Both the position numbers and the translations under genes were made by a program. The notes under the pieces were generated by a model, which worked only from the letters and a program-made list of their open reading frames with translations, was not told the DNA's origin and made no database searches. Below, piece by piece: positions 2,961 through 42,328 of a stretch of DNA of 64,000 nucleotides (positions are counted from its first letter, which is position 1; each line of letters begins with the position of its first letter). Source of the stretch: Zootoca vivipara (lineage: Eukaryota). The stretch covers positions 22,940,001 through 23,004,000 of the forward strand of contig NC_083281.1 of assembly GCF_963506605.1 (NCBI RefSeq). The letters are read 5' to 3'.

Positions 2961-5184
2961 CGCAGATGTGTAGCACTTTATTAGTTAAAATAACCTTTCA
3001 AGCCACGTTGGGTGGTTGTTGTTGTGTTTATTAGCATGTTATATATTTTCACGTTTTTGGTTCATAAAGCACCATGTGATCCTTGAATGAAGTGTTTTAT
3101 AGAAATATAATAAATGATATGATGGTGATGATGATTACAAAAAACCTGGTAACCTGGTCCATGAAACTAGTAGTAGCCTCTTAGAATGTCCACATATACT
3201 TTTGCTAGCACAACGGTGGTCTTAAAAAGGCAACAACTGTACACTTGTGCATGTATTTTTCCTTGGAAGACAACACTTTCTGTTTGGTAATCATTTTGTA
3301 AGATATTCCATAATGTTTGCAAAGAAACAGCAACAACAAGAGTCCATCTGACTTCTAGTTTACAGGTGCCTCTTTGCTTGGTTGACCTGAAACAGTATGT
3401 TGAAAAAAGCTGCTTCGCTAACTGCTGTTTACATTTCCTGGAAGCAGAAGCTATGAGGAGCATCTCCTTTAAAAAGAAGTGCATCACACATGGGCATAAC
3501 CTGAGTTGTGTATGAGGAAGGGAGCCAAGAGGGATTGAGTCTTTTGCTCACAACTTGGTTTCATTCTTACAGGTAGCAATGGCTGATTCTTCTGCAGTTG
3601 GTACGCCACTGTTGACTGAGCAACTTCTTACAAAGGACTGCAATGGGCTTGATGTTTCAAAAGCCCAGGAGCATCTAACAGTCTGTAAGCCAGAGCCTAT
3701 CTGTGTAGAGGTGAGCTCCACAGTGCTGCCCCCTGTCTGCCCAGGCACAAATGACAGAGAAAAAGGACTCCCTAGCAATAGTGCAATCTGTGAGTACTAT
3801 GGTTTTGTTCTTGCTTTTAGAATTTAAACGATTCTCCAGCTGGTGAAAGAGAGTTTCTAGCACCCTGTTATAAACAACTATTAAAAAGTTGCATTAGAAA
3901 TTATAATCTTCTTCCTTTCAGTATGTTTCTCTGCCAGCATTCTGAAATATGAACAAGGATATGACTGCATGACATCATGAGACACAGGTTTTCTGCATGG
4001 CACCATTTGCAGTGCAGAGCGCCAGCTCTAGGTCCATGCATGCAACCCAATGTATTGCCCAGGTTCTGCAGTTTCCTAGCTTTCATTAAAAAAATGAGGG
4101 GAAAGCTTCTAGCTCTCATAATTATAGAGGAAAATCTTTAAAACTATTTAATACTTACTTTCAGGTAAGTAACCACCGCCTTTAGGTGAGGAATGCCTGT
4201 CCACTTCTATTGCCTATGTCACTTTCATCCTGATAGTTTGCATGTGAGGCCCTTCTCCTAATCAACTCTTCATTCTCCCTTTATCCCTGCTGGGGAACAG
4301 CCAAAGTGTTCCACAGCGATTACTTGACTGGAGAAACACAACAGTGTGTAAAGACAGCTGCTGCTTGGTATCTCCCCTCTCCCCACTTCTGCTATCACTC
4401 TTCAACAGTTGCTGAAGGAGGAGTGTAGCTTATGCAACCACCTCAATAGCTTGTTTACAATGCTGACTTAAGCCTACATAGCTTGCGTAGTCCGAAGGTT
4501 GTGAGAATGAATAGTGTCCTGCTGATGAAAAACTGATTGCCAGGAAGGCAGACTTTTCATGGCATTCTATCCACCTGTTTCTCCTTCTCTTCAGGGAGGT
4601 TCTGCAAAGTAAACTGCAGGTTCTGCCAGGCCCTGCTTGATTCCCTGTGTTTCTCTTCATCTCCAGACAGCCTGGGTGCCAATCAGTGTTTTCACTGCCT
4701 GATCACCTTCCCAGATGAGAAGTTCAAGGAGCGGCACATGAAGCGGGAGCACCCGGAGGACTTTGTTCAGGCCAATCTGCGTGATGCTCTTTTTGTCTGC
4801 TTCATATGTAACAAGGCCTTTGAGAGTTCTCGTGCACTCATCTGCCACCAGCGGGGCCATGCGCCAGCCCCGCCTTCTGACTCTACTGACTGCTTGCGCC
4901 CTACCTTTGACTGCCATGACTGTGGCCGCCGCTTCAGCCAGTTGGCCAACTACCAGCGTCACCGCCTGGGCCATGCTGCGGGCCACAGCTTGCCTCACCA
5001 GTGTCCGGACTGTGGCAAGAGCTTCCGACAGCTTTCAAACTTGCGTCGGCACCAGGCTTTCCACCAGCAGACCCAGGAGTTGCTGCCCTCCCTCCCCTAT
5101 TCCTGCATGGAGTGTGGGGAGAGCTTTAACCAGGAGGCTGGGCTGCATGAACACTACATCCGCCATGCCCGTGGGGAGCTCTAA
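2571..5184 (+). CDS. ZNF576: Zinc finger protein 576 (C2H2), 3 coding exons, ~247 aa
   Basis: Exons 2571-2579, 3573-3789 and 4667-5184 join with GT-AG sites in phases 0 and 1 (744 nt). The last exon encodes CLITFPDEKFKERHMKREHPEDF...CMECGESFNQEAGLHEHYIRHARGEL, closely matching recalled human ZNF576 (CLITFADSKFQERHMKREHPADF...HYIRHARGEL). An alternative start at ATG 3579 is possible. Confidence 0.92.
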
Positions 5185-11204: not shown

Positions 11205-14200
11205 CTATTTCTCTGTGTAGGCCAGCAGCAGCACCGCCTCTGCATTCTCAGACAGTTCCACCACAGCTCGCTTCAACATCTGGTAGGTGGACTCAAAGGA
11301 GATTTCGGGCTCTATCTTGACACCCCGCCCCAAATAGGGCACATAGCTCCATGCCCAGCTGGTCAGGGAGGCCGGCTTGGTGATGAGGCTGAGCACATAC
11401 GCAGAGTCCAGTGGTTTAGCAAAGGGGCTCCGGATCACCCCCTGAAGCAGGCGGGGGCTTGTGCTGGTAGCCTGGGCAGTGTGCTCTAAGGAGGCCTCAT
11501 CCAGGCCAAACTCTATGCAGAAGCTGGCAATGGTGGCGGTGAGGTTGTCGACCACAGCCGGCTGAGGATGCTCCACACAGAAGAGGCAGCTCTGAAGGGC
11601 CTTTCCCCACACATCTTTCATCAACACCTTGGCCTTCCGCCTAACCACTCGGGATAGGACGGTCGGCAGGGCTTTCCTCAGAGCTTTTGTCTTCAAATCC
11701 GGAGCGGAGCTGCTGAGGGCTCCCAGGAGGAGCGGCAAGTCGAAGGTGTCTGGCTTGAGGCAGGAGACCAGGAAGACCTGTGGGGAGTCCACGCCATCCT
11801 TCTTCAGAGCTTCCTCGCAGCTCTTCTGCACCTGACCCTGCACTTCCTCTTTGGCGACGGGTTGGCTCCCAGGCCGGGTCTCCACATCCACATCTATCTT
11901 GCTCCTCACAAAGAAGAACTGCTTCCCTGCTGAGGTGATGGCTCTGGCCAGGCAGCTGTGGGTGTGCTTATAGCGCTCGGAGGCCACCAGCAGGAAGAAG
12001 TCGTAGCGGCTGAGATCCAGGTGGCTCACACCTTCCTCTGTCAGCCCCACTCCTGGCAAGTCCCAAAGGTAAAGGTTGGGGACAACTGGGAGTAGGTAGG
12101 GCATGGCTTTCCTCGTCATCTCAGTCACCCCAGTGGGGGCCGCATCCGGTTCCCCACAGCCCACCCCTCTCAGAGCATTAACCAGCGAGGACTTCCCTGA
12201 GCCAACTTCTCCTATCACGGCGACATCCAGTCGTATTTGTGTGGGGTCCGTCAACACGGATGAGATCACAGTTGGGACTTCTGACAAGCTGCCGCCCTGG
12301 CAGATTGCGTACAGCTCCTTAATCTTCTTCTGACTCACCTTGTTCAAATCCTCCAGGTTCCCATCGTGAGTTCTAGAGAGAAGTGAGAACAGAATAATAA
12401 ATATCCACAGTCCGGGGCTGCGTTTCCTCAGGAGTTGCACGCTGGCAGTTGGCAAGGCCGAACTGGGGTCGGAGGGGATAGCCAACCCATTGGTATTTCT
12501 GCAGCAGGGTCCCAGCACACTCCCTGCCTCCAGCTTCCTAGGGCCACCCAATGAGAAGGAAAGGCGAGCTTTTTAGCTACGGTATGTTCCAAAGTGAAGC
12601 GCTTAGGAACACTGAAAAGGTAAGGTGCTCCCATTTCAAGAGAATGGGCTGCAAGTTCTGTTATGCACAATGGGACTTCGAGGAAAACACAACTCCAAAA
12701 GAAGATATTGGAGGACTCCAATTCATTGCCCGTGTAAATAGCAGATCTAGCTAAAAGGTAACACACGGAGATCTGCATTGATTGTTTCAGTGCATCCCTA
12801 ATTATGATTATTATTGTAAAATAATTATAAGATGGTTGGCATGGTCTTAGAAGAAAGCATGGCTGTGAGGGGCCATCTTCAAATATCTAATGGACTGTCA
12901 CATAGAAGAAGATGGAGCAAGCTTGTTTTCTCCTGCTCTGGAGGGCAGGGCTCAAACCAATGGATTCAAGTTCCACGAAAGGAGATTCCAACTAAACATG
13001 GGGGGAAACTCTGATAGTAAGAGCTGTTTGGCAGTGGAAAAGACTCTCTCGGGAGGTGGTAGACTCCTTTCATTGGGGGTAAACAATGCAATATTTGCAA
13101 AGCACAATCTAGTGCAGGTGTGGGGAACTTTCGGTACTCCAGAGTTTGCTGAACTACAGCTCCCATCATCCCTAGCAATCGGCCTTTCCTCCTAGGGATT
13201 ATGGGAGTCGAAGTTCCCCAGATTTGTCACTGACGTATATTATGAGATACCACCAAAACGAAATTTGAGAAGCTTTTCCCCGTCTCCAGAGTTCACAGAA
13301 CTGTATGAAAGGGAACCCTGTTTTCAAGAATTTATCCTATTCTATTCCACCTATTGCTTTTTCACATTCCTGCCTTAGCTAATCCCAGCTGCCACATTCT
13401 GATGTTCCACTGGTCCTATTCTAGAAAGAAAGCTCATGACCCAAAAGCTTTAGCAGCAAGGTCCCCCCCCCCCGCTGTATTTTTTTTTTTGTGCTACTGA
13501 AAAAAGTTAGGGCTCCACCAAGCCTGCTAGTATCTTCGTTTGCAGGCGGCACATAGCCCTAACAACTTGCAGCTTGAACAAACACTTTTGCATGTCTACA
13601 TTCTGAGCAGCTGAATGATCCCTCCTACGGTGCAGCCACACCAGAATTATCTGCCTTTAGAAGAGCCTGGATGAAAGGACAGGACAGCAACTCATTTAGG
13701 GATGCAACAGGCAACCTCCTTTGCAGAAGGACTCTGGACTTACAGGAGCCTTTCATTACCTAATTTCCTTTTTATTTTCCAGGGCTTGTTAGGACCATTC
13801 TTATGGGACACAGCCTCCTCTTTTCAACAGTGGGGGAAAGAACACAGAAGCCAGATACAAACAACACAAACTACCTGTACTTTTTGGAAACAAATGGAGA
13901 AATTTTTGTTTCAACTAGCTTTTCTAGCTAGACGGCAAGGTTTCTGCCTTTTAAAACCAGGGTGGATTTGATTTAAATCAAATCGATTTAAATCACAATT
14001 TAAATCACTAGTCAGTAAGACTTGATTCAAATCATTTTTTTTACAGAAAGACTCATTCTTGCTGGTATAATCTTAATATTTACAACCAGATGAAGGTTTC
14101 ATTTTTGGAATAATAAATTTTCAGAGTTGTTTTTACAGTTATATAAAAAATTACTGATTTGGTTATACTATTAGAAATACATAGACAGATAATTATGAAA

Positions 14201-15700
14201 TTATGGTGAGGTTCAATAAGTTAACTGTTTATATTTGGAAAATTTTCTGCTGTGCTTTATTGGAAGGAGAAAAAAATCATTTCCTTGATAACAATTTATT
14301 TAACTAAAACAATAACATTATAACATATGTATCCATGTTTGTTAAATGATGTGGTTAAACAATTTATTTTTTTTAAATGATGTGGTTTTTTTCAAAAAAT
14401 AGTTTAACCACATCATTTAACAAACATGGATACATATGTTTTAGCACACATGAAAAACTTAAAACTTTATTTCCTGATGGACTACAGTGGTACCTCTGGT
14501 TAAGAAATTAATTCGTTCCGGAGGTCCGTTGTTAACCTGAAACTGTTCTTAACCTGAAGCACCACTTTAGCTAATGGGGCCTCCTGGTGCCACCGCGCTG
14601 CCAGAGCACAATCTCTGTTCTCATCCTGAAGCAAAGTTCTTAACCCAAGGTACTATTTCTGGGTTAGCGGAGTTTGTAACCTTAAGCGTTTGTAACCCGA
14701 GGTACCACTGTATAATGTAACCTAAATAGAAAACTATCTTTAGTAAGATTTTTCCTCCGAAAGTATTTTATTTTAAAAATCTGAATTTTAATAAAAAAAT
14801 CCAAGTTAAATAATTTTTTAATTTTTTTAAAAAAAAACCATTGATTTTTATCTACCGTTTAAAACCCATACTTGGTTGTTCTTGCACTCTTTTTTATTTT
14901 AGCTGTTTTCAAGGATCTCTCTGTAAATTGCTTTGGGGCCTACGTAGATACTGGAGGCAACTCACAAATAAGTAAATCAAGAGAGGCACCCTCTTCCCGA
15001 CTCACCTCTTCAAATTGAGCACCTCTCCTTCCAGGCTGTCTTCAAAGCGTGCAAACTCATATCTGTCCGTCTCCAGCCCTGACACCAGGAATACCTTCTT
15101 GGGGTCCACCCCATGCTTGGTCAAAACACCAGCTAGTTCCTTCCGGATCAGCCCCAGCTGCTCAGCCGGATTGTACCTGGATCTGAGCCGCCGCTCAGCT
15201 GTGTGCAGGTCCAAGTCCACCTTGGTGCGTGCCAGGATGAGGCCTTTCCCCTTCTGCTTGATGGCCTTGAGGACTTGGAGGTGGCTGTCCCTCAAGCCTC
15301 CATCCCCGACCACCACCACAAAGCAGCTGAATTTGCTCAGGTCGCCCAAGCGTTTGAGGTAGGCGGACGGCTTCTCCGACGCCTCGAAGCCCGGCAGGTC
15401 GTGCAGGGTGAGGTCTGGGTAGACAGGGTGAGCGTGGGCAACCGGTTGCTTCGTGGTCTCAGGGGCCTCTCGGAGATATGCCCATGGATCCGTCACCCGG
15501 CGGGGCTTGTCCAGGAGAGCCCCGACCAGGGTGCTCACCCCTGAGCCACGCTCTCCCAGGATCCCGACCTGGATCTTGAGGGTGTTCACACAGTCCACCA
15601 GCGCCTGGATTTGGGAAGCGGCACTGCTGGCGTTTTGGGCCTCATACTGGGCCTTCAGGATCTTCAGGTACGATTCGTCCAGGACGGAGGAACCGGCCAT
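11205..15700 (-). CDS. Immunity-related GTPase (IRG/p47) paralog with tandem GTPase domains, 2 coding exons, ~620 aa
   Basis: Exons 15700-15006 and 12372-11205 join across a phase-2 intron (AG|GTGAG...CTCTAG|A, Arg codon; 1863 nt). Domain 1 motifs: GERGSGVS, DLPG, TKVD. Domain 2 motifs: GEVGSGKS, TGVTEMT, WDLPG, YDFF, SKID, followed by the IRG helical C-terminus. An acceptor at 15709-15710 implies an upstream 5' UTR exon. Confidence 0.9.
12840..13075 (+). mobile_element. CR1 LINE 3' fragment
   Basis: Encodes DCHIEEDGASLFSPALEGRAQTNGFKFHERRFQLN, resembling a CR1 ORF2 C-terminus. Confidence 0.7.
13958..14858. mobile_element. AT-rich non-autonomous DNA transposon carrying a nested MITE
   Basis: Starts CAGGGTGGATTTGATTTAAATC and ends GATTTTTATCTACCG (degenerate inverted termini), with repeated GATTTAAATC motifs. 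Family not identified. Confidence 0.5.
14485..14710. mobile_element. Tc1/mariner(pogo)-type MITE
   Basis: TIRs CAGTGGTACCTC...GAGGTACCACTG flanked by TA on both sides. Confidence 0.85.
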
Positions 15701-18649: not shown

Positions 18650-19400
18650 TCCCGGATCCCCACCCCCGACTCCGGTTCTTGTCTTACAGGTTAGGGAGAA
18701 TGCCAGCCACAAAAGGAACCCAGGAGTCCTGGATGACTGCCAGCCAGCCAACCCCACCCGGCCGCCCCCCAAAATGAAAAGGTTTCGGGAAGGGAGGTGT
18801 CCCAGGGGCAAAACCTACCCGTCCGTCGCCCGCCTGTCTGGGTCTTCTGTGCGCGGCGAGGCTTGGATACTGCTGCGCCCCTGCGCCCTGGCCCCAGATG
18901 ACGCGCAAAGCAAAATCTGGGAAACAGAAACCTCTTGGACGGGGGCGGAGACGGCGGCTCCTCCTCTTCCTCCCGGCTGGCTGTGCTTGGCAGGCGGAAA
19001 GGCTCCTCTGACGTCTCTGGGATGCGAAGGGAAAACAGATCAGAGCGCATCGGCAGGCGGGTGGGATGAGGAAGCAGCCAAAGGGGGACAACGCCAGGAA
19101 GCCGAGCGAGCGGTCCCGGGGCGCTGCCTTGTAAGCGGGTAAGCAAGCCCAGCCCGGCGGGTGTCTCCCCATCTTCTTCAGCCTCCATAAAACGAATTCG
19201 TTCTGCCTGCCTGAAGATCTTCCCGGCCTGATGGAAAAGGCAAAAATACTCTCCGGCCTCTTTCCGCATTAGTGCGCCGCTGTGTCTGCCAGATCGCTTA
19301 ATCAACCTGTTTTCTTGCCTAAGAATCAGCGGCCCTCTTATGCCATAGGCTCAACCCTTACGCCAAAACGTAGGAGAAGGGTCGCGGGCGATGACCGACT
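18650..19400. promoter_or_regulatory. Bidirectional CpG-island promoter of the two IRG genes, with an ISRE
   Basis: CpG island between the divergent genes. Candidate first-exon donors on both strands: minus GG|GTAGGT at 18818, plus GTAAGC at 19131 or 19139. ISRE-like GGAAACAGAAACC at 18920-18932; CRE-like TGACGTC at ~19009. Confidence 0.7.
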
Positions 19401-19883
19401 TCAGGGGCTGGTGGCTTCAAGGCTGGATTAATGCAATGCTTTTTTTGTGAGGCTTCTCTTGCAAATTGATCTGGAAGCTGCAGGATGAGGCCATGTTAGC
19501 ATATAGCACTCCTGCTCGGAGATCTGCACCAGCTGCCCGTTTGGGGTGAAAACCTCCCCGCCAGCATATAACACCTTGCTTGCGGGGGTTGTACCGTACT
19601 GCTTGCCGATCTGCTACCCAGGTTCAATATTATACCAGGTTATACCATTCAGGACCAGGTTACCTGGGAGATACACCATGGCTGCGGTCCTCAGCTTGAG
19701 GCCAGACTCATTCCATTTTGGTGGTTTGTGTGTGTGTGTGGACTTAACATATATACAGCCAAGCTCATTGCGTTTAATCACAGCCTCTAAGTAATGTTGT
19801 TGTTTCTCTCTCTCTTTCCACCTCTCCCCTTTCCTTATGTTTCCGCAGCATCTCTTGAGAAGCCCTGTTTCCCTGCATCCAAC

Positions 19884-22800
19884 ATGGCTCTAAAGACCCC
19901 CCAGGGCTCTGTGCTGAGCTCCCCAGAGCAAGGGGATGTCTCCGTGGTCCTTGTGGGAAAATCAGGGGTGGGAAAATCGGCTCTCCTCAATGCCCTGCGT
20001 GGGATGACCGAAAACGATGTCGGATGTGCTCCGTTGGATGCCCCACCTAAATCCGGGGGCCCTGTCATGTACCCCGACCCATCCCATCCCAATTTACTGA
20101 TCTGGGAACTAGCTCTGGATTGTGAGGGGCAGGCCGACCGGTGGCTGAAGGAGGCTGACGTTTTTGTCGTGGCGACAGATGGCAAGTTTGACGAGACTCA
20201 TGCCCACCTGGCCAGGGAGGCCCGGGCGGCTGGCAAGAAGGTCTATTTTGCCCGCACCAAGGCTGATTTGGATCTTCATACCCTCAAGCGGTTGATGGGG
20301 GAGCACTACAACCGGCCCGAGGCCCTGCAGGCCCTGCGGGGTGTCTGTGCTGAGTCGCTGGGGGCCCACGGTCTCGGGGAGCCCTTTGTCTTCCTGATCT
20401 CTGCTTTTGAACCCTTCGCCCTGGACTGCCCCCAGCTGCGAAAAGTGTTGCTGGACGACGTCCACACGTACGAGAGGTAAGTCAGGCAACCAGCTCAAGC
20501 GAGCCGTAGGAACATAGAATCATATCAATGAATGAACATGACTAAGATTCATAATGACGATAATAATATTGTGGAACTAGAAAAGGGTTGCCGGAAGTGA
20601 TCAAGGGGATGAAGCCGCTCCCCTATGAGGCTCAGGGCTTTTCAGTTTAGAAAAAAGGTGATTAAAGGGAGAGGACACTATAGAGGTGTGTAAAATTACG
20701 TGTGACACAGAGAAAGTGGATAGTCATAATCAGGCATCCCCAAACTGCGGCCCTCCAGATGTTTTGGCCTACAACTCCCATGATCCCTAGCTAACAGGAC
20801 CAGTGGTCAGGGATGGTGGGAATTGTAGTCCAAAACATCTGGAGGGCCGAAGTTTGGGGATGCCTGGTCATAATACAGTCGTATCTTGGTTGTCAAACGC
20901 CTTGGTACTTGGACGTTTTGGCTCCCGAACGCCGCAAACCCGGAAGTCAGTGTTCCAGTTTGTGAGCGTATTTTGGAAGCCAAATGTCTGTTTCTGCTGT
21001 CAGAATTGTTTCTGGGGCCAATCAGCCAATCGGAAGCCACGCCTTGGTTTGCGAACGTTTTGGGAAGCCAATAGGGGTCTCCCAACAACTCTCATTGTAA
21101 CTGGCTGGCCACTGTGAGAATCGGATGCAGGATTGGACAAACCTTTGATCTGATCCACCAGGGCTCTTACGTTCTTAAGTTTAATGGAAGAAAACCTACA
21201 GGGACTTCATGAACAGAGTTCTGAGACCAGGTGCCTGTGGGCATGGGCACGTCGCTCATAAGGACAAGGGCCTTTGGCTGATGTTCTTGTGGAGCGACAA
21301 GGAATGTAAATTACAAGCGCAGGCCGATATTTATATCCTGGTGGCCTTTGCTCGAGTGTCATCAGGACTTTTGCTCAGAGCAAAGCAACCAGAGAAGTGG
21401 CCTTGTTGGTCTCTGTTTGTGCCTCCCCTGTGGAGAAAACAGTGTTTGTTTACAAGCAACAACCCCCACCTCCAAGATGCTCCTGCTACCCCGAGTTGCA
21501 ATCAAATGAAGCTGTGTCAATCCAGTGTAGTGCAGTGTTAACTTTCTCGGAATTCCAAACGGGTCCACTGGTCCAAAAAGGGTGGCAACCTTTTAATAAG
21601 TCGACCACATATGAAAAAACGTTCCCTCTACCTCTTTGGACTTGTAAAAGGGTAAAAAGGGTGTTGGGAAATGATCACATAATGAATTGAATTTTGTTTT
21701 TCAAATGTCCCCCCCGCCCCAAACAACAACAACAACAACAACAACCAGAGTGCTTCCTGTTGGGGATAATTTAGACTGAAATTCCCAGGTGTCAAAAAAG
21801 GATACCATATTTATGGATGCAACAACTGTGGCCCATGTTTTGTTAGCTCCCATATGGAAATCGAGTGAGGTCCCAGCCAAAGAAGAATGGCATCTTAAGT
21901 TGACAGAATATGCACAACTTGGAGACTTAATATATAAAATAAGAGAACAAGAAGAACATACGTTTAGAGAAGATTGGAAAATGTTTATTGAATATATGGG
22001 AAATAATTGTGTACAGCTGAAAATGCTGGCAGCATTAAGATACATTCAACAGTGCAAATAAGTTTTGATGGATGCAATAATGGAATACTGAATGGTATAG
22101 TTTTTTGTAAAATATGCAGGGATTTATGATATGTAAAATGAACCAGGGAAGAAGGGAAGTTATTGATATCTTTAGGATGCAAAAATGAGTACTGTATTTT
22201 TCGCTCCATAGGACGCACCTGACCATATGACGCACCTAGTTTTTAGAGGAGGAAAACAAGATTTTTCTTTCTTTCTTGAATTGTCCTAGGCATAGCAGCC
22301 AACTCCTAGAGGCCTACGTGCCTTTGCCCCCCCCATTAAATATTTGAGGAAGCTTCTTTTGCAAAGGGGGAAAGCTCCATTTTTGAGGATCAGCTCAAAG
22401 TTGTGCAGCTTTTTTTGCAAATGGGAAAAGCCCCTTTTTTGTGGGGGGGTGGTGTGTCAGCTCAGAGTTGTCCATCTTTTTTGCAAAGGGGGAAAGCTCC
22501 ATTTTTTAGGATCAGCTCAAAGTTGCTGAGTTTCCTTGCAAAGGGAAAAAAATTCCTGTTTTTATGGGGTTCAACTCACAGTTCTGCAGCTTCTTCTATA
22601 GGAAAGGAAAGAGGCCCATTTCTACAGTTTCCAGACAGATAATCTAACCAGTCAGTTACATGTCTCCCTCTGCAGACAATAATTGAGGCCTAGGCAAGGG
22701 GCCGGGAAGGGAGCTAGCTCTCTTATCTCCCTTCCCGATCTCTTGCAATCAGCTGCTGAGCGGGTTCCTTTCTGCTCATTCCCTCTTGTTAGCCTTTAGC

Positions 22801-24444
22801 TCTTTCTTAAAAAAAAACCAAAACAACAACCATGATCTGCCTTTAGCCCCTGGGCAATTCAGCTCCAGGGACCATGCATTCGCTCCATAAGACGCACAGA
22901 ACCTCCTCTTACTTTTTAGGAGGAAAAAAGTGTGTCTTATGGAATGAAAAATACGGTAATTTAAATTGTAAAATGAAAAATTTAATAAAAATTGTATAGA
23001 AATAACAAAAAGTGTGGCCACCTTTGAATGAGCTTAGTTGCTGTGGAATGCCTGCTGACCAATGGGGTGGGAAATGGGAACTGGAATGGAGGGCTCCACA
23101 ATACAACATTAATTTCATATGATATTAATTCTAGCCATTGGATACCAATGATGTTAATATAATAGGAGATCAACTATAGTTACACTATTAATCCCAGTTC
23201 TTGCTCCCTCTCCCTTGCTGTGTCCTGTTTGCCCCCACAGGGTCCTAAAGCCCACTCGCTTGGACTACGAGGTGATCAGCGAGCAGGAGATTGCAGAGAT
23301 CCAGGAGGCCTATGAGCTGGGAGGCCTCTCGGAAGTGGTGACCCGCATTCAGTGCAGCCTGGAGACCCTCTGGAATGCCCATCTTGACATTGGCATCACG
23401 GGGGAGTCGGGCGCTGGGAAATCCACCTTTGTCAACGCCTTGAGGGGTGTGGGCGATGAGGATGAGGGAGCTGCGGAGACGGGCGTGACAGAGACCACAG
23501 CCCAGCCTACGCCATATCCTTACCCCGCCCACCCCAATGTCATCCTGTGGGATCTCCCTGGCATTGGCACACCCAACTTCCAGGCTGAACGCTACCTAGA
23601 AGCGGTGGAGTTTTCTCGCTACGACTTCTTCATCATCCTGGCCTCGGAGAGGTTTAAGGAGAACCACGTCCGTTTGGCCAAGGCCATTGTCAAAGAAGGC
23701 AAGCGGTTCTATTTCGTGCGCACCAAGCTGGACAATGACCTGGAGTCCATGAGGAGGCGGAGGAACCCTCCAGCCGACGAGGAAGTCCTGGAGCAGATCC
23801 GGACTGACTGCCGGGAGAAGCTCGCCAAGGCCGGGCTGGCAGACACCAAGGTTTTCTTGCTCAGCAGCTTCGAGATGGACAAGTTTGACTTCCAAGTCTT
23901 CGAGGAAACCCTGGAGCAAGAACTTCCGAGCCACAAGCGCCACGCCTTCCTGCTGTCGCTGCCCAACGTCTCCTCGGTCATCATAGACAAGAAGAGGCAG
24001 CTCCTTCACCAGGAGGTTTGGAAGGTAGCTCTTATCTCCAGCTTGGTGGCCGCCGTCCCTTTGCCGGGCCTGGCCTTCACCTGCGATGTCTCCATTTTGC
24101 TGAGGAAGCTGTCCACCTACCGGCAGGACTTTGGCCTCGATGCAGCGTCCTTGACCCGTCTGGCCGAGCGGTCGGGGAAACCACTGGAGGTCCTGAGGGC
24201 CGAAGTCCACAGCACTCTAGGCCGGAGCATCAACAGGGAAGTGGTCATTGGGTTGCTGGGGAAGGCCACTGGGACAGGCTTGGTGGTGGCCAATTTCTTC
24301 ATCCACCGGATTCCGATTTACGGAGCCCTGGCATCCGGCGGGATTTCCTTCCACACCACTTACTACATGTTGAGCCAGTGCTTGGAAGAGCTGGCTAATG
24401 ACTCCCAAAGGGTCCTCATGAAGGCCTTTGAAAGCGAGGTCTGA
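19884..24444 (+). CDS. IRGQ: Immunity-related GTPase Q orthologue (tandem GTPase domains; second domain IRGC/IIGP-like and intact), 2 coding exons, ~598 aa
   Basis: Exons 19884-20476 and 23241-24444 join across a phase-2 intron (AG|GTAAGT...CACAG|G; 1797 nt). N-terminal QGDVSVVLVGKSGVGKSAL matches recalled human IRGQ QGDVTALFLGPPGLGKSAL. RLDYEVISEQEIAEIQEAYELGGL matches QDGFEVLGAAELEAVREAFETGGL, and VPLPGLAFTCDV matches APLPGLGWACDV. The gene lies near ZNF576. IRG family membership is certain; the symbol is by inference. Confidence 0.85.
20731..20866. mobile_element. hAT MITE with 8-bp TSD
   Basis: TIRs CAGGCATCCCC...GGGGATGCCTG; perfect TSD GTCATAAT. Confidence 0.9.
21750..23010 (+). mobile_element. 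Decayed L1-clade LINE 3' end, interrupted by a DNA transposon
   Basis: Encodes VAHVLLAPIWKSSEVPAKEEWHLKLTEYAQL..., like an L1 ORF2 C-terminus. The 3' UTR resumes after 22958 and matches the copy at 28.7-29.0 kb. Confidence 0.75.
22192..22956. mobile_element. Tigger/pogo-like non-autonomous element nested in L1
   Basis: Imperfect TIRs CTGTATTTTTCGCTCCATAGGACGCAC / GTGTGTCTTATGGAATGAAAAATACGG with TA on both sides; internal ~60-bp tandem units. Confidence 0.8.
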
Positions 24445-33900: not shown

Positions 33901-36900
33901 TTCTTTCAATGGGAAAGTTCGCTTCAGGTTAAGTACAGACTTCCGGAACCAATTGTGTTTCTAAACCGAGGTACCACTGTAACAAACAAACAAACAAACA
34001 AACAAACAAACAAACAAACAAACAAAAATAAATAAGCCTATTCAACTAATTAGTCCTGCTAGTGGACGTCCATGCGAGGACTTCTGCTAGCAGAGTGGGG
34101 CTTCCCTCTCCTCTCCCCTCGTGTGCCCCCTGAAATTGGCTTGGAGCTTGGGGGGTGGGGGAGAGACCCTCAGAATAATATGCAGGGGCAGGAGAGGGAA
34201 TAATGTTCTGTCAGGGGGAGCTGGAATAATAATATAATAATAATTTATAATAATGATATAATATAATGATTTATACCCCACCCATCTGGCTGAGTCTCCC
34301 CAGCCACTCTGGGCGGCTCCCAATCGAACATTAAAACAATACAGCATTAAATATTAAAAGCTTCCCTAAACAGGGCTGCCTTCAGATATCTTTTAAAATT
34401 AGGATAGCTGCTTATTTCCTTGACATTTGATGGAAGGGTGTCCACAGGGTGGGTGCTGCTACCGAGAAGGCCCTCTGTCTGGTTCCCTGTAACCTCGCAA
34501 TGAGGGAACCGCCAGAAGGCGCTCGGAATACTTGTGTTGATGGAAAATTTCCTTAATGAATTCCTAATAATAAAAAGTTGTTGTTGTTGTTATTTTGTTC
34601 TACTTTTTGCACAAGTGTCTCAAAGCAACACACCAATCAGCGTAAAGCAACCTATACAGTAAATGGAAAACAAAACAATTGAAAGCCGAAACCTAATGTG
34701 TTGTATCCGATGCCAGTCCTACTCTGAGTAGACACGCTGAAATTAATGGAGAACTTGCAACCCAACCTCTCCATCCCCCTAACATGCTGTAGGTCTGGCC
34801 ACCACAGAACAGCTCCCCAAGGAAAAAGAAACCGATCACCAACTGCTGCAAAGAAAAAGGTTAACCCTGAAAAGTTATCAGTGTTGGTGCCCGGCAAGCC
34901 TTCATGGGGTTAGCATTCCTTTTTTAAAATTTTTTTAAAAATAGACTTTATTAGAAAGTTTTAAAAAGGTATACACACACTAGAAAATTTAAAGTAACTT
35001 AATAACATAAGATAACTTAGCAACTTAAATAGCATAGCATAACAAAGGTAACATAAATAACCTAACTGCATATTTAAGCCACCCAACATAAATTAATCAA
35101 CATAAATAAACAAATCAAGGTTGATCTAAATAGATTAACTCAATCAAACTACAAATAATAAACAAGATCAACTTAGATAAGCATAACATAACGTAACATA
35201 ACATGACATAACATAACATAACATAACAACATAACGTAATATAACATAACAAAAAAAGAAAAAGAAAATTATCCCCAGATCAGATCTTAACACATGGGCC
35301 TATCTCCATGAAATCCATTCATTTTAGATTAAAATTGGCTTCCAATCGCCAATATATCGCTTCCCTTACTATTGTTTTCCTCTTTAGTTTGCTTTCCCTC
35401 TTATTAAATCCAACTGAATTATTCCTACATGTTTTCTCTATTCCAGACAAATCACTAGCTCTGTTTTGATATTTTCTTTTTAAAAATACTCTTCCACGTA
35501 TCTCCATTCTGTTTTTATTCTCTGTTTTGATATGTTCCTAATTACCGCCGTCATTCTTGCTAGGTTCATGAACTCTACTACTTTAATTTGCCACTCTTGG
35601 ATTGTTGGTATTTCTGTTCCTTTCCATTTCTGAGCTAATACTAATCTCACCGCGGCACACGCATATAAGAAAATATTAATTCTATCTCTAGGTATATTTT
35701 CTGGGATTAGGCTTAGTAGAAAATATTCAGGTTTCTTTTCAAACGTAATTTTTATCATTCTCTTCATTTTTTCATATATATCATTCCAAAATTTATATAT
35801 TTTTTTACATTCCCACCAACAGTGAAAATACGTACCAGTTTTTTCCTGGCACTTCCAGCATTCTTTTGTTTCTGTCTTGTAGATTTTAGCTAGTTTTTCT
35901 GGCGTCAGGTGCCATCTATATACAAGCTTCATCATGTTTTCTTTGATTCCTGAACACGCTGTAAATCTCATTGTCGATCTCCACAATTTATCCCACTGCG
36001 TTTTATAAATTGGTCTTCCTACATCCTGAGCCCATTTTGTCATCACAGATTTTATCTCCTCGTCTTTTAATTCCCATTCTAACAAAAATTTATACATCTT
36101 AGACAATGATTTAGCCGTATTATCAATCAAAATTTCTTGTAATTTAGATTTCCCCTCATTAAATCCTATTTCTTTATGTTTTTTAAATAAACTTTGTATT
36201 TGTAGGTAATGTAGCCAGCTCATGGGGTTAGCATTCCATAGACTACAGAAAAGGCCTATTCTCTCATCATCACACATCATCTGCCAGAGGGAACACACAG
36301 AGAAGGGCCTCCAATTAGGGGATGTGACAGAGCCGGCCCACCCATGAGGCAGGGTGAAGAGTCCGCCTCAGGTGGCAGAAGTGCAAGAGGCGGCATTCTG
36401 CCCTCCCCACCTCTTCTGCTGCCAAGAGGGAGGTGTTACAGCGCACAGTGTTGCTGCTTATCTTCCCCAGGTGGAATGCTCTGAGGAGCACCCTGGCTCC
36501 TGCTGAGTTTGGTGACAGCCAGGGTGTTCCTGCACGCCATGTTGCTGATCAGCTGACCCCTCCGGGGGGGGGGGGAGGAGCCAAATGGCAATGCTCTGAG
36601 GAGTGCTCTGGCTTTTGCCAAGTTTGCTGAGAGCTGGGAAGAGGCGGCAGAAGTGGTGGGCATATGGGTGAGAGGGGGCGGTAGGCGGCAATTCCCATTT
36701 TGCCTCAGGTGGTGAAATGGACTGGAATCTGATGATCTGTGTCTCTCTCCCTGCTACTCACTGTTGCTTCCAACAGTTCACGGAAATGGATCAAAGAATG
36801 GAGTGCAGTGTCAAACCTGCATCGGGAGCGCAGCTGAATGTGGCCGCAATGCGCCCACAGGGCCATGCTATGGGAGTGAAGACCACTGTGTGCAGATCTC

Positions 36901-39900: not shown

Positions 39901-42328
39901 ATCTGAACTCTGTTATTCATGCAGACACACAAGGAGCTGGGTTCCTTTGAGGACAGGAGATTCTTGCTTTTGTACCATCTCCACACCATAGACTTGAAAG
40001 TGGTTTTAACAACCAACCCTTTTACAGTGGTACCTCAGGTTACAGACAACTCAGGTTACATACCCCGGTAACCCAGAAATAGTACCTCGGGTTAAGAACT
40101 TTGCTTTAGGATGAGAACAGAAATTGTGCTGTGGTGGCGCAGTGGCAGCGGGAGGCCCCATTAGCTAAAGTGGTACCTCAGGTTAAGAAGAGTTTCAGGT
40201 TAAGAACGGACCTCCAGAACGAATTAAGTTCTTAACCTGAACTTGCAGGGAACCAGGCAGAGGGCCTTCTCGGTGGTGGCGCCTACCCTGTGGAACACCC
40301 TCCCATCAGATGTCAAAGAGAAAAACAGCTACCAGATTTTTAGACGACACCTGAAGGCAGCCCTGTTTAGGGAGGCTTTTAATGTTTAATTGATTATTTT
40401 ATTTCATTTTTCTGTTGGAAGCCGCCCAGAGTGGCTGGGGAAAACACTCCGGGAATTGTAGTGCTGTGAGGGTGGTAGGAGGGGGGGTCTCCTAACAATT
40501 CTCAGTACCCGTAAAAAACTACAGTTCCCTGGATTTTCGGCGGGTGAGGGGGAAACCTTGATAGTTAAAGTGTTATAAAAGTGTGGGTAAGCAAACATTC
40601 TGCAGTCTTCCTGTTTGGATGGATTAAGTGTGCCTCTCCAGCTTCAGAAATGTAGAAAGTGCCAAAGCAAAGGGTTTAGGTCGCCCTGATCCCAGATAAG
40701 TTTCCCACAGTGAAGCCTGCAGATTCTGGTCAATTTCACGCCCCCTGAAGACATCCTTTTAATTGCACCTCTGTATTGATTTGTGCTCCTGATGCTATCA
40801 AGGTGTTTGCACACGCTATCCCGTTTTCAATAGATTGAGCACACACTGCTTCACTTCCAATGAGTGCCTATCTCCGTAACTATTTCTGCCACAAATGTTT
40901 TTGTCCTGCTTTGGTTGAGCTTTAAAGCCCCTCCGGACAGCAAGGATGTGGCAGCATTGGGGAGGCATCACAGGGCAAATCCACCACAGATGCACCATCC
41001 TTGTGTTAAGAACATGTTGCAGAATACACCTGCAATAAAACACCGTTTCTTGGAGGGACCCTCAATTTCTCACTCATTCTTTACGTGTAGGAAATGGCTT
41101 AATATAAGAGGACCATTTCGCCCTCTATTGGCCATAGGTGGAATGTGATGCAGGTTTTACGCTGCTCTAAAATGCAGTGGGGAGCCATCAGTACCTTGGT
41201 TTTCGAACAGCTTAGTTCCTGAAAGTTTTGGCTCCCGAACATCACAAACCCGGACGTGACTGTTCCAGTTTGCGAACTATTTTTGGCAGTGCTTCCCCCC
41301 CCAAAAAAAATGTTTAGGGGTACTCTCCTTTCCCTACTCATATTGAAATACTTCATTCATTATAGACATAAGAAGAATTTATCTTGATCTGATGTAACCT
41401 ATATTACTGTTTTTACTTTTTGGATGAATTTTTGTTCATTATTTCTTTTTAATTTCAATAAAGCATGAAAGAAAGAAAGAAATACTGCCCCTCGATGAGG
41501 CCAAAGTTAGATTCACAAAATGTTTAGGGGTATGTGTCCCTCCGCATCCCCCAAGAAAAAAAGCACTGATTTTTGGAAGCTGAACAGCCGACGAGGCTTC
41601 TGAGGTTTCTGATTGGCTGCAGGAGATTCCTGCAGCCAATCAGAAGCTGCACTTTGGTTTTCAAATGTTTTGGAAGTCGAACGACTTTTGGAACAGATTC
41701 CGTTCGACTTCCAAGGTACGACTGTATCTCTATTTGGCCTTCATAGAATCATAGAATTCTAAAGTTGGAAGGGACCACAAGGGTCATTTAGTCCAACCCC
41801 CCCCGCGCCGCAATGCAGAAATTTTCTCATTGTGGGACTCGAACCCATGACCCTGAGGTTAAGAGTCTCAAGCTCTGCAGAACTATCCCCAGGCTACGTC
41901 TCTCTCTCTTTGGCTTGTCCTTGAACTCTTATAATGGAGAGGGTTGTTTAAGTGTGGGTAGAAACTACTGTAGCCTACCCTACAAGGCGAAGCTTCCATT
42001 AGTTGCCCCGCCCACTTTCCCCTCTGGCTCCACCCACTGCTGCCATGCGACCCTCAGAAGATTGCCCAGAAGGGAATGTGGCCCTCGAAAAATCCCCAAA
42101 ACCTGTCTTCCTTCTTTTCCAGAGAACAGAACTGTGACCTTTCAGAAAGGCTGTGCCACCGAGACCATGTGCAGCAGCTACAAGGATATCTATTCCAAAC
42201 TGATGGGGCTGGATTCCTTTGTCGAGTGTTGCAAAACGTCCCTCTGCAACCAAGCCAGAGAGCATTCTGGTCCAGAAATGCTACTAATGGTGTCTGCTTC
42301 TGCCTGGTGGCTGGCATGGATGGCTTGA
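30928..42328 (+). CDS. uPAR/PLAUR-like GPI-anchored protein with three Ly6/uPAR domains (gene A), 7 exons, ~310 aa
   Basis: Exons 30928-30976 (signal peptide MKFQLSLVIFIFCLGA), 32397-32516, 33254-33388, 36777-36917, 38343-38486, 39120-39257 and 42123-42328. All introns are phase 1 GT-AG; 933 nt open. LU cysteine patterns are present (10/8/10 Cys) and the C-terminus is hydrophobic (MLLMVSASAWWLAWMA). The exon plan is that of PLAUR. Confidence 0.88.
32808..32970 (+). mobile_element. Sauria SINE 5' portion
   Basis: tRNA-like head GGTGGCGCTGTGGGTTAAACC...GGTTCGAATCCC, then GGGGTGAGCTCCCG...GTGCAAGTAGATAAATA. Confidence 0.8.
33809..33979. mobile_element. Tc1/pogo-type MITE followed by (AAAC)n
   Basis: TA-CAGTCATACCTC...GAGGTACCACTG-TA. 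Confidence 0.8.
34268..34525 (-). mobile_element. L2 3' fragment
   Basis: Same family as 7545-7830. Confidence 0.75.
34920..36225 (-). mobile_element. 5'-truncated L1/Tx1-clade LINE (ORF2 C-terminus plus 3' UTR)
   Basis: An uninterrupted frame encodes RWHLTPEKL...CWKCQEKTGTYFHCWWEC (CCHC zinc knuckle). The 3' UTR has (GTTAT)n, AATAAA and an A-rich tail at ~34920-34950. Confidence 0.88.
37854..38195 (-). mobile_element. BovB (RTE) LINE 3' fragment
   Basis: Encodes VPWTARRSNLSILKEISPECSLEGQIVKLRLQYFGHLMRR...RGRQRTRWLD; (CAA)n tail. Confidence 0.92.
39518..39749. mobile_element. Tc1/pogo-type MITE
   Basis: CAGTGGTACCTCGG...CCGAGGGACCACTG termini. Confidence 0.7.
40025..40441. mobile_element. 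Truncated Tc1/pogo MITE joined to an L2 3' fragment
   Basis: 40025-40240 matches the 14485 MITE family; 40241-40441 is L2 on the + strand. Confidence 0.7.
41741..41890 (-). mobile_element. tRNA(Lys)-derived SINE with CR1-type tail
   Basis: Minus strand: GAGACTCTTAACCTCAGGGTCATGGGTTCGAGTCCCAC...GGTCCCTTCCAAC...ATTCTATGATTCTATG. Confidence 0.75.

What the first reader, a model, noticed from the sequence alone, without database searches (positions are those of the whole stretch)
23241..24444. IRGQ orthologue that still looks like an active GTPase
Seen: domain 2 has G1 GESGAGKS (23401-23424), switch I AETGVTETT (23473-23499), G3 DLPG, G4 TKLD and a G5-position SSF. Known (recalled): mammalian IRGQ is a 'quasi' GTPase with these motifs destroyed. 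In mouse Irga6 the switch I KTGVVEVT carries catalytic E106 and the Toxoplasma ROP18 targets T102 and T108; all three equivalents are conserved here and in the paralog (PTGVTEMT). Inference: this is the ancestral enzymatically competent state, and mammalian IRGQ became a pseudoenzyme later.
Basis: partly seen in the sequence, partly recalled or inferred. Interest (0 to 1): 0.8.

Follow-up and report, generated by a model that had tools for sequence, protein, structure and literature searches.

The report
Lizard IRGQ with intact GTPase motifs
This lizard gene is the counterpart of mammalian IRGQ, an autophagy receptor that is a dead GTPase in mammals. Here its main domain keeps every residue known to be needed for binding and splitting GTP, so mammals (and apparently alligators and a frog) lost the enzyme later.

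Summary
Exon 2 (23241-24444, + strand) encodes a complete IRG module (Pfam IIGP, 350 bits). G1, switch I, G3, G4 and G5 lie at the stated coordinates. The Irga6 equivalents K82, S83, T102, E106 and T108 are all present.

RNA reads confirm that exon 2 is spliced to an upstream exon (19884-20476). That exon encodes a truncated, half-degenerate G domain.

IRGQ orthology is well supported by six lines of evidence:
- The gene lies near ZNF576, as IRGQ does in mammals.
- Its N-domain hits the solved human IRGQ N-domain; the paralog's N-domain and its own C-domain do not.
- The structural alignment places lizard YEVI on human LIR1 (residues 186-189).
- The published start of the mammalian long exon matches the exon 2 start and a motif found only in this lineage.
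- The gene does not group with reptile IRGC.
- The motifs are invariant or nearly so in 28 orthologues from lungfish to squamates.

By contrast, a frog and an alligator orthologue have lost the motifs, as mammals have.

No tree with mammalian IRGQ could be built, and enzyme activity is untested. The first scan pass had already noted this gene pair on this same window. I found no publication describing a motif-intact IRGQ orthologue.

The parts
19848..20476 (+). Gene B (IRGQ orthologue), first coding exon. ATG at 19884, donor AG|GTAAGT after 20476 (phase 2). Encodes a 197-aa truncated G domain (domain 1).
   Evidence: Sequence; Pfam IIGP 104 bits, model positions 27-221 only; RNA contig X1 covers 19848-20474; AF2 model pLDDT 84.
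19956..19979 (+). Domain 1 P-loop GKSGVGKS (kept). The G3 position of this domain reads WELAL (DxxG lost) and switch I is degenerate.
   Evidence: G25, G30 and K31 are invariant in 30 sequences.
20477..23240 (+). Intron (2764 nt, GT..AG) containing high-copy repeat sequence.
   Evidence: Splice joint seen in 19 RNA reads from 15 start sites in run X20, and in contigs of X1 and X2.
23241..24444 (+). Gene B terminal coding exon: linker with LIR-like motif plus a complete IRG module (domain 2). Stop TGA at 24442-24444; the 3' UTR runs past 24700.
23266..23277 (+). YEVI, a LIR-like motif at the position of human IRGQ LIR1 (aa 186-189).
   Evidence: VIA-align offset of 21 between the exon-1 model and 8q6q_D; LIR1 position from PMC13172515; human/mouse sequence GFEVLG at exon start; lineage-specific regex.
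23401..23424 (+). Domain 2 G1 / P-loop GESGAGKS (K60 = Irga6 K82, S61 = S83).
   Evidence: the Lys and the Ser are each present in 27 of 28 orthologues.
23473..23499 (+). Domain 2 switch I AETGVTETT (T80 = T102, E84 = catalytic E106, T86 = T108).
23551..23562 (+). Domain 2 G3 DLPG.
   Evidence: D in 27 of 28, G in 27 of 28.
23722..23733 (+). Domain 2 G4 TKLD.
   Evidence: K in 27 of 28, D in 28 of 28.
23863..23871 (+). Domain 2 G5-position SSF (mouse Irgb10 also has SSF; Irga6 has SNK).
   Evidence: Alignments.
11205..15700 (-). Gene A, the head-to-head paralog with the same two-exon plan (exon 1 15700-15006, exon 2 12372-11205). Domain 1 G1 lysine is lost (GERGSGVS); domain 2 is GEVGSGKS / PTGVTEMT. 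It has no LIR-linker motif.
4600..5184 (+). ZNF576 coding exon, used as the synteny marker.
   Evidence: All 63 hits are ZNF576-type; nearly all are named zinc finger protein 576, including mammals at 42-50% identity.

Best explanation
Gene B (19884-20476 spliced to 23241-24444) is the squamate orthologue of mammalian IRGQ. It encodes a 598-residue protein with two G domains.

The N-terminal part is a truncated G domain. It keeps the P-loop and G4 but has lost G3 and switch I. It corresponds to the human IRGQ N-domain that docks GABARAPL2. An ATG8-interaction-type motif (YEVI) follows at the position of human LIR1.

The rest is a full IRG module with N-terminal helices, G domain and C-terminal helical domain. 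Unlike in mammals, this module retains G1 to G5 and the Irga6-type catalytic glutamate.

The most likely working mode is inferred, not shown. Domain 2 binds GTP and hydrolyses it by the Irga6 mechanism: the switch I Glu activates the water molecule, and activation occurs through G-domain dimerisation. The nucleotide state would then gate oligomerisation or partner and membrane binding of a protein that also engages ATG8 proteins.

The intact state is ancestral, because shark, lungfish, caecilian, salamander, turtle, tuatara and squamate relatives all have it. Mammals lost the motifs. Apparently independently, so did an alligator and the frog Bombina, while the N-domain and the C-terminal scaffold were kept in both (the LIR-linker motif is seen in Bombina; the alligator model breaks off inside it).
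For: Gene model. The splice 20476|23241 is read in RNA. Orthologues annotated as 598-aa proteins occur in squamates, tuatara and turtles at 79-89% identity over exon 2, and in a caecilian at 62%.

IRG module. Pfam IIGP 350 bits over the full model. E-values of 7.6e-87 to 4.4e-74 against the mouse Irgb10, Irgb6 and Irga6 structures.

Catalytic residues. Mapping to Irga6 is ungapped. Glu106 is essential in Irga6. In 28 orthologues the counts are E77 28, K82 27, S83 27, G103 27, E106 26, T108 27, G3 Asp 27, G4 Lys 27, G4 Asp 28, R159 27.

Orthology:
- ZNF576 lies 6 kb from gene A. Mammalian loci list IRGQ together with XRCC1/ZNF576, and with XRCC1, PINLYP, SRRM5, ZNF428, CADM4 and PLAUR.
- 8q6q_C is hit by exon 1 at E 3.4e-4. 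Gene A exon 1 and gene B exon 2 do not hit it even at E<=10.
- VIA-align gives Z 15.4, rmsd 2.6 A, 146 residues aligned, 27% identity, model 15-197 = chain 4-176. This places Y207-I210 on human 186-189, which is LIR1.
- The published human and mouse long exon begins R-L-L-P-P-A-Q-D-G-F-E-V-L-G-A-A-E-L-E-A-V-R-E-A-F-E-T-G-G. The lizard exon begins R|V-L-K-P-T-R-L-D-Y-E-V-I-S-E-Q-E-I-A-E-I-Q-E-A-Y-E-L-G-G.
- A regex for this motif hits 25 of 338 IRG proteins held, all of gene-B type.
- In the trees, gene B domains 1 and 2 each form starred clades with newt, caecilian and lungfish (and, for domain 1 only, alligator) sequences. These clades are separate from reptile IRGC and from gene A.
- NCBI names the newt and lungfish members 'IRGQ-like'.
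Against: - No mammalian IRGQ sequence could be handled by reference. The comparison with the mammalian long exon was made by eye from a paper's supplement, so there is no tree or reciprocal best hit that includes mammals.
- In a whole-library HMMER search with the C-terminal 170 residues, 20 of the 150 best clusters were given names; none of those was a mammalian IRGQ, and no unnamed hit had IRGQ's length and match position. Mammalian IRGQ is therefore very diverged.
- Intact motifs do not prove activity. Two Irga6 catalytic-interface positions differ: D164->H and N191->S. However, H is as common as D among 211 other IRG domains.
- The AF2 model of domain 2 superposes poorly as a whole on the crystal structures (TM 0.44, pTM 0.68).
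- The LIR core is altered in colubroid snakes (FEEP, FEEF).
- Human LIR2 (WEVL, aa 421-424) lies in a mammal-specific insertion and has no evident counterpart here (by eye).
Confidence: 0.7

Rival explanations
1. Gene B is not the IRGQ orthologue. It would instead belong to a sauropsid/amphibian tandem-IRG lineage that resembles IRGQ only through shared IRG ancestry, with mammalian IRGQ arising separately from a mammalian IRG such as IRGC. Bekpen et al. considered this likely for the mammalian versus fish IRGQ genes.
For: Bekpen 2005 states that IRGQ genes of different taxa are unlikely to be monophyletic and stresses IRGQ-IRGC linkage and colinearity. The PGLxxxCDV motif shared with mammalian IRGQ also occurs in other IRG clades. 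No named hit among the best 150 clusters is a mammalian IRGQ. Truncated-plus-full tandem architectures are common in fish, geckos and turtles.
Against: The ZNF576 neighbourhood. A specific hit of domain 1, but not of the paralog or of domain 2, to the human IRGQ N-domain. LIR1 falls at the identical structural position. The exon start and the lineage-exclusive linker motif are shared with the published mammalian exon. An alligator orthologue with degenerate motifs shows that the same kind of decay happens within this lineage.
Confidence: 0.1
2. Gene B is the IRGQ orthologue, but domain 2 is already non-catalytic. It would be a nucleotide-binding switch or scaffold whose motifs are conserved for binding only, or which acts only as a regulatory partner of other IRGs.
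For: The D164 and N191 equivalents of the Irga6 catalytic interface differ, and D164H is deleterious in Irga6. Three lineages dispensed with the motifs while keeping the rest of the protein, which suggests the core function does not need hydrolysis. Domain 1 is already half-degenerate.
Against: The catalytic Glu106 equivalent is kept in 26 of 28 orthologues, and T102, G103 and T108 are also kept. That pattern is expected for hydrolysis, not only for binding. H at the D164 position is as frequent as D across other IRG domains. Domain 2 has the shortest branches in the family tree.
Confidence: 0.18
3. The paralog gene A, not gene B, is the true counterpart of mammalian IRGQ.
For: Gene A lies nearer to ZNF576 in the window. 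Its domain 1 has lost the P-loop lysine, which gives it a 'quasi' character. It evolves faster than gene B.
Against: Gene A exon 1 does not hit 8q6q even at E<=10. It has no LIR-linker motif: 0 of 45 gene A proteins match the regex. The start of its exon 2 (THDGNLEDLNKVSQKK) does not resemble the mammalian exon start.
Confidence: 0.02

Closest known systems
Mammalian IRGQ (FKSG27), a quasi-GTPase and selective-autophagy receptor for MHC class I with two LIRs (PDB 8Q6Q; PMC1297648, PMC13172515)
   Same: - Two-module plan: a truncated N-terminal G-like domain, then LIR1, then an IRG-like module encoded on one long terminal exon.
- N-domain similarity: E 3.4e-4; Z 15.4; 27% identity.
- LIR1 at the same position.
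- The same first residues of the long exon.
- Shared C-terminal stretches (W[KR]xAL..SL.AA.P.PGL...CDV; GG[IL].[FY]) seen by eye.
- ZNF576 in the neighbourhood.
   Different: - Domain 2 here has GESGAGKS, TGVTETT, DLPG and TKLD, where mammals have AGKADVGLV, WTVPLG and no G4.
- There is no Gly/Ser/acidic insertion in the G domain.
- There is no evident LIR2.
- Domain 1 keeps a GKS P-loop.
- A head-to-head paralog is present.
Mouse GKS IRG effectors Irga6, Irgb6 (Tgtp2) and Irgb10
   Same: Full colinear IRG fold by sequence, at roughly 50% identity by eye in the Irgb10, Irgb6 and Irga6 alignments (Foldseek reports 30-37%). G1 to G5 are identical in type. The catalytic Glu106 and switch I threonines are kept. 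G5 reads SSF as in Irgb10.
   Different: - An extra N-terminal G domain and a LIR.
- No N-terminal myristoylation context, because domain 2 is internal.
- The gene is highly conserved and stays at a fixed, conserved locus, rather than being a rapidly diversifying family.
- Positions D164 and N191 differ.
IRGC ('cinema', interferon-inducible GTPase 5), the name that annotation pipelines give to this gene's orthologues
   Same: An IRG module with intact motifs; 54-55% identity to reptile IRGC-type proteins; same chromosomal region in mammals.
   Different: Reptile IRGC orthologues are separate single-domain genes of about 412 aa that form their own 100* clade. IRGC has no N-terminal G domain and no LIR-linker motif.
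Zebrafish irgg1-irgq1 tandem transcript and mouse tandem Irgb genes (Bekpen 2005)
   Same: Two IRG-type G domains in one polypeptide, with one more degenerate than the other.
   Different: In zebrafish the N-terminal half is canonical and the C-terminal half is the quasi-GTPase. Here the N-terminal half is the degenerate, truncated one and the C-terminal half is complete.

Membership tests
IRG / p47 immunity-related GTPases (Pfam PF05049 IIGP) | Significant full-length match to the IIGP profile and to solved IRG structures | tested here: met
   350.5 bits, model positions 1-374 of 375. E 7.6e-87 to Irgb10 and 1.5e-74 to Irga6.
IRG / p47 immunity-related GTPases (Pfam PF05049 IIGP) | Canonical G1 GX4GKS, G3 DXXG and G4 (N/T)KXD motifs | tested here: met
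   GESGAGKS, DLPG and TKLD. They are conserved in 27-28 of 28 orthologues.
IRG / p47 immunity-related GTPases (Pfam PF05049 IIGP) | Switch I catalytic glutamate (Irga6 Glu106) and interface residues T102, G103 and T108 | tested here: met
   E84, T80, G81 and T86 by ungapped alignment. Their roles are described in PMC3042988.
IRG / p47 immunity-related GTPases (Pfam PF05049 IIGP) | GTP binding and cooperative hydrolysis | not testable with these tools
   Requires recombinant protein.
IRGQ orthologue group (by descent) | N-terminal G-like domain homologous to human IRGQ 1-189 | tested here: met
   phmmer E 3.4e-4, absent for the paralog and for domain 2. VIA-align Z 15.4, 27% identity.
IRGQ orthologue group (by descent) | LIR1 immediately after the N-domain (human aa 186-189) | tested here: met
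   YEVI at residues 207-210, which equals human 186-189 by the structural offset. The human and mouse sequence there is FEVL.
IRGQ orthologue group (by descent) | Long terminal exon that starts at the same codon and encodes the whole IRG-like module | tested here: met
   Phase-2 junction AG|G gives R, followed by VLKP.... The published mammalian exon begins agg ctc ctg = RLLPP.... This comparison was made by eye.
IRGQ orthologue group (by descent) | Chromosomal neighbourhood (ZNF576, PINLYP) | tested here: met
   ZNF576 at 4600-5184. Mammalian neighbours come from the literature. The identity of the Ly6/uPAR-like ORFs as PINLYP was not confirmed.
IRGQ orthologue group (by descent) | Groups with mammalian IRGQ in a tree / reciprocal best hit | not testable with these tools
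What was shown is that the gene is separate from reptile IRGC.
IRGQ orthologue group (by descent) | LIR2 (human aa 421-424, WEVL) | tested here: inconclusive
   By eye, WEVL lies in the mammal-specific insertion just before the G5-equivalent strand. The lizard sequence there (GLADTKVFLL) has no such motif.
'Quasi-GTPase' (the functional meaning of the Q in IRGQ) | GTP-binding motifs of the IRG module radically modified or absent | tested here: not met
   All motifs are intact. The gene is therefore an IRGQ orthologue by descent but not a quasi-GTPase.

The most novel reading that the evidence does not exclude
IRGQ began as a two-G-domain IRG carrying an ATG8-binding motif, with a GTP-competent C-terminal module, at or before the origin of bony vertebrates. 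The enzyme was then discarded independently at least three times (mammals, crocodilians, at least one frog), while the N-domain and the C-terminal helical scaffold were kept (and the LIR-linker motif at least in mammals and the frog). That would make living reptiles and salamanders a natural 'before' state for studying how a GTPase became a nucleotide-independent autophagy receptor. It would also imply that in these animals selective autophagy, or another IRGQ function, is gated by GTP.
Probability: 0.45. Interest if true: 0.65.

Novelty: new variant of a known kind. Interest (0 to 1): 0.55.

Why it matters
IRGQ has been treated as a pseudo-GTPase of obscure origin. Bekpen et al. could not place it in the IRG tree and doubted that IRGQ genes of different taxa were related. 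It has recently become important as an autophagy receptor that controls MHC class I quality and tumour immune evasion.

A clearly orthologous and highly conserved form with a complete catalytic apparatus does three things:
- It fixes the direction of evolution as enzyme first, pseudoenzyme later, and repeatedly so.
- It shows that the N-domain and LIR1 unit, which docks GABARAPL2 in humans, predates the loss of the enzyme.
- It supplies natural proteins for testing what GTP binding contributed to the ancestral function.

It also corrects a systematic annotation error, since these genes are labelled 'interferon-inducible GTPase 5-like', that is IRGC-like.

Tried and rejected
- **Retrieving mammalian IRGQ by similarity.** Two word-indexed searches and a full HMMER scan with the C-terminal 170 residues returned only non-mammalian IRGs among the hits that were named. 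The ESM Atlas returned generic IIGP clusters without ids.
- **Using the human and mouse IRGQ exon sequences from Bekpen's supplement.** The comparison is by eye only.
- **Searching the joined (spliced) protein.** The exons were searched separately, and natural full-length orthologues were used where a whole protein was needed.
- **PGLxxxCDV as an IRGQ-specific signature.** Rejected, because it occurs in other IRG clades.
- **Foldseek ranking of 8q6q for the domain 1 model.** Uninformative, since it did not appear in the Foldseek list shown, which ran to rank 50. VIA-align was needed.
- **D164->H as a sign of inactivity.** Rejected, because H is as common as D in other IRGs.
- **Pfam on the raw Ly6/uPAR-like ORFs.** No hits, so PINLYP synteny is not claimed from the window.
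- **A strict ISRE pattern.** It found nothing in the promoter.
Full report
**What is at the coordinates**

The window comes from a squamate. The paralog is 93% identical to a Podarcis protein. An ORF at 23215-24444 (+) contains an exon that begins at 23241, behind a pyrimidine-rich ...cccccacag acceptor.

Its 400-residue translation matches Pfam IIGP end to end (350.5 bits). It matches the solved mouse IRG structures Irgb10, Irgb6/Tgtp2 and Irga6 with E-values of 7.6e-87 to 4.4e-74.

- G1 GESGAGKS, 23401-23424
- switch I AETGVTETT, 23473-23499
- G3 DLPG, 23551-23562
- G4 TKLD, 23722-23733
- SSF at the G5 position, 23863-23871

The HMMER alignment to Irga6 has no gaps over this stretch, so exon-2 residue n equals Irga6 residue n+22. 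This gives K60=K82, S61=S83, T80=T102, E84=E106 and T86=T108.

Pawlowski et al. (PMC3042988) show that no Glu106 mutant activates hydrolysis. They list E77, T102, G103, E106, T108, S132, R159, K161, D164, N191 and K196 as the catalytic interface. Here nine of these eleven positions are identical or conservatively replaced.

**Gene model**

Upstream, an exon with ATG at 19884 ends in AG|GTAAGT after 20476. It joins the G at 23241 to form an Arg codon.

RNA confirms the splice. Nineteen reads from 15 start sites in a raw RNA-seq run cross the joint 20476|23241 (GT..AG). So do contigs from two other runs, one of them 3.6 kb long. Read orientation fits a + strand mRNA.

The first coding exon encodes a 197-residue G domain without the helical domains (IIGP positions 27-221). 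It keeps the P-loop (GKSGVGKS) and G4 (TKAD). It has WELAL in place of DxxG, and its switch I is degenerate.

Each exon was searched by reference, and natural full-length orthologues were used where a whole protein was needed.

**The paralog**

A second gene with the same two-exon plan and the same intron phase lies head to head on the minus strand (15700-15006 and 12372-11205).

**Is it IRGQ?**

Annotation pipelines call the orthologues 'interferon-inducible GTPase 5-like', that is IRGC-like. True reptile IRGC ('cinema') proteins are separate single-domain genes of about 412 aa. They form their own clade with 100% support, away from gene B.

Six independent observations tie gene B to mammalian IRGQ.

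1. *Synteny.* The ORF at 4600-5184 is ZNF576. All 63 hits are ZNF576-type, nearly all named so, mammals included. In pig and cattle, IRGQ is listed together with XRCC1, PINLYP, ZNF576, SRRM5, ZNF428, CADM4 and PLAUR.
2. *N-domain.* The solved human IRGQ N-domain (8Q6Q, residues 1-189) is hit by gene B exon 1 at E 3.4e-4. It is not hit, even at E<=10, by the paralog's exon 1 or by gene B's own and far more canonical domain 2.
3. *Structure and LIR1.* An AF2 model of exon 1 (pLDDT 84) aligns to 8q6q_D with Z 15.4, rmsd 2.6 A, 146 residues and 27% identity. Model residues 15-197 correspond to chain residues 4-176. This offset of 21 puts lizard Y207-E-V-I210 on human residues 186-189, and those residues are LIR1 (PMC13172515).
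4. *Exon start.* Bekpen et al. printed the long coding exon of human and mouse IRGQ (PMC1297648, Additional file 10). It starts RLLPPAQDGFEVLGAAELEAVREAFETGGLEAA. Lizard exon 2 starts R|VLKPTRLDYEVISEQEIAEIQEAYELGGLSEVV. The junction codon, the LIR and the E-[IL]-x-x-[IV]-[QR]-x-A-[FY]-E-x-G-G helix are all shared. Counting along the printed human exon puts WEVL at residues 421-424. That is the published LIR2 position, which validates the numbering.
All 25 are gene-B-type proteins, from squamates, tuatara, turtles, newt, Bombina and lungfish. None of the 45 gene A proteins matches, and neither do the IRGC-type or other tandem IRGs.
6. *Independent naming.* NCBI names the newt and lungfish members of the clade 'immunity-related GTPase family Q protein-like'.

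The C-terminal halves also resemble each other by eye. For example, mammals have AWRPALLASLAAAAAPVPGLGWACDVALL and the lizard has VWKVALISSLVAAVPLPGLAFTCDVSILL. The PGLxxxCDV core also occurs in other IRG clades, so I do not count it as specific.

**What could not be done**

No mammalian IRGQ sequence was available under a reference id. It is too diverged to show up among the hits that were named.

A tree and a reciprocal best hit including mammals are therefore missing. The comparison with the printed exon is by eye only.

**Age and constraint**

Trees of full domains and of G domains show three things:
- Gene B domain 2 forms a starred clade with newt, caecilian and lungfish sequences.
- Gene B domain 1 forms a starred clade with the corresponding domains of Bombina, newt, caecilian, turtle and alligator.
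- Gene A forms its own clade, which includes caecilians.

The A/B duplication therefore predates amniotes. Gene A, gene B and shark tandem genes share a 96* clade.

Gene B domain 2 has the shortest branches in the family: 79-89% identity across lepidosaurs and turtles, and 62% to a caecilian. In 28 orthologues the nucleotide-binding and catalytic positions are invariant or nearly so.

Gene A is looser. Its domain 1 lost the P-loop lysine in amniotes (caecilians keep it), and the Glu106 equivalent of its domain 2 is replaced in 22 of 36 sequences.

**Polarity of the loss**

Shark, lungfish, caecilian, newt, turtle, tuatara and squamate members all carry intact domain 2 motifs. The other lineages examined do not:
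- Mammalian IRGQ has AGKADVGLV / WTVPLG / no G4.
- The Bombina orthologue (593 aa) has GGNPDIRHS at G1 and no TKxD, but keeps the linker motif and the C-terminal scaffold.
- The alligator protein (491 aa) groups with turtle gene B in domain 1. Its contig length equals that of alligator ZNF576. It lacks the G1/switch I segment, has DLPT at G3 and has no G4. Part of this could be a gene-model artefact.

The loss seems to have happened more than once.

**Mechanism (inferred)**

Domain 2 most likely binds and hydrolyses GTP as Irga6 does, with E84 activating the water and the G-domain interface mediating activation. The N-domain plus YEVI probably dock an ATG8-family protein, as human IRGQ docks GABARAPL2.

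None of this is shown. The global AF2 model of domain 2 is only moderately confident (pTM 0.68) and superposes poorly as a whole on the crystal structures (TM about 0.44). I draw no conclusion from its helical-domain arrangement.

**Novelty**

In the searchable literature only Bekpen 2005 discusses the origin of IRGQ, and it doubted common descent of IRGQ genes across taxa. I found no description of a motif-intact IRGQ orthologue.

The genes themselves are already predicted in public annotations, under an IRGC-like name.

Noticed in passing
window 11205-15700 (-): The paralog gene A has lost the domain 1 P-loop lysine (GERGSGVS) in all amniote orthologues, while caecilian orthologues keep GKS/GKT. 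Its domain 2 catalytic Glu equivalent is replaced (A/G/T/Q) in 22 of 36 orthologues, although it is kept in this window.
   Followed up: partly
window 18920-18932: A near-consensus ISRE (GGGAAACAGAAACC) lies in the region between the two divergently oriented IRG genes. The RNA contig shows that gene B has a further 5' exon upstream of 19300.
   Followed up: partly
window 20731-20866: A repeat of about 135 bp inside the gene B intron attracts very high RNA-seq depth (about 1000x against 5-18x on the exons), with hundreds of loose ends. It looks like a high-copy transcribed interspersed repeat (SINE-like).
   Followed up: no
P0335 (newt, 802 aa) and P0191 (lungfish, 831 aa): The salamander and lungfish IRGQ-type proteins carry a third, strongly degenerate G domain in front of the two found in reptiles.
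   Followed up: partly
P0190 (alligator) and P0189 (Bombina): These orthologues have destroyed domain 2 motifs. No bird orthologue appeared in any list. The alligator model lacks about 100 residues, which could be a deletion or a prediction artefact.
   Followed up: partly
window 41813-42328 (+) and 53754-54248 (-): These ORFs have Ly6/uPAR-like cysteine patterns (e.g. CCKTSLCN), which might be PINLYP- or PLAUR-type exons. The raw ORFs gave no Pfam hit.
   Followed up: partly
window 35480-36298 (-): A 272-aa ORF in an AT-rich stretch (GC 0.37) looks like the tail of a retrotransposon ORF. It was not examined.
   Followed up: no
gene B orthologues of colubroid snakes (P0016, P0017, P0019, P0020, P0022): The LIR core reads FEEP or FEEF instead of [FY]-[ED]-x-[ILV], so ATG8 binding may have been lost or altered in these snakes even though the GTPase motifs are kept.
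   Followed up: no
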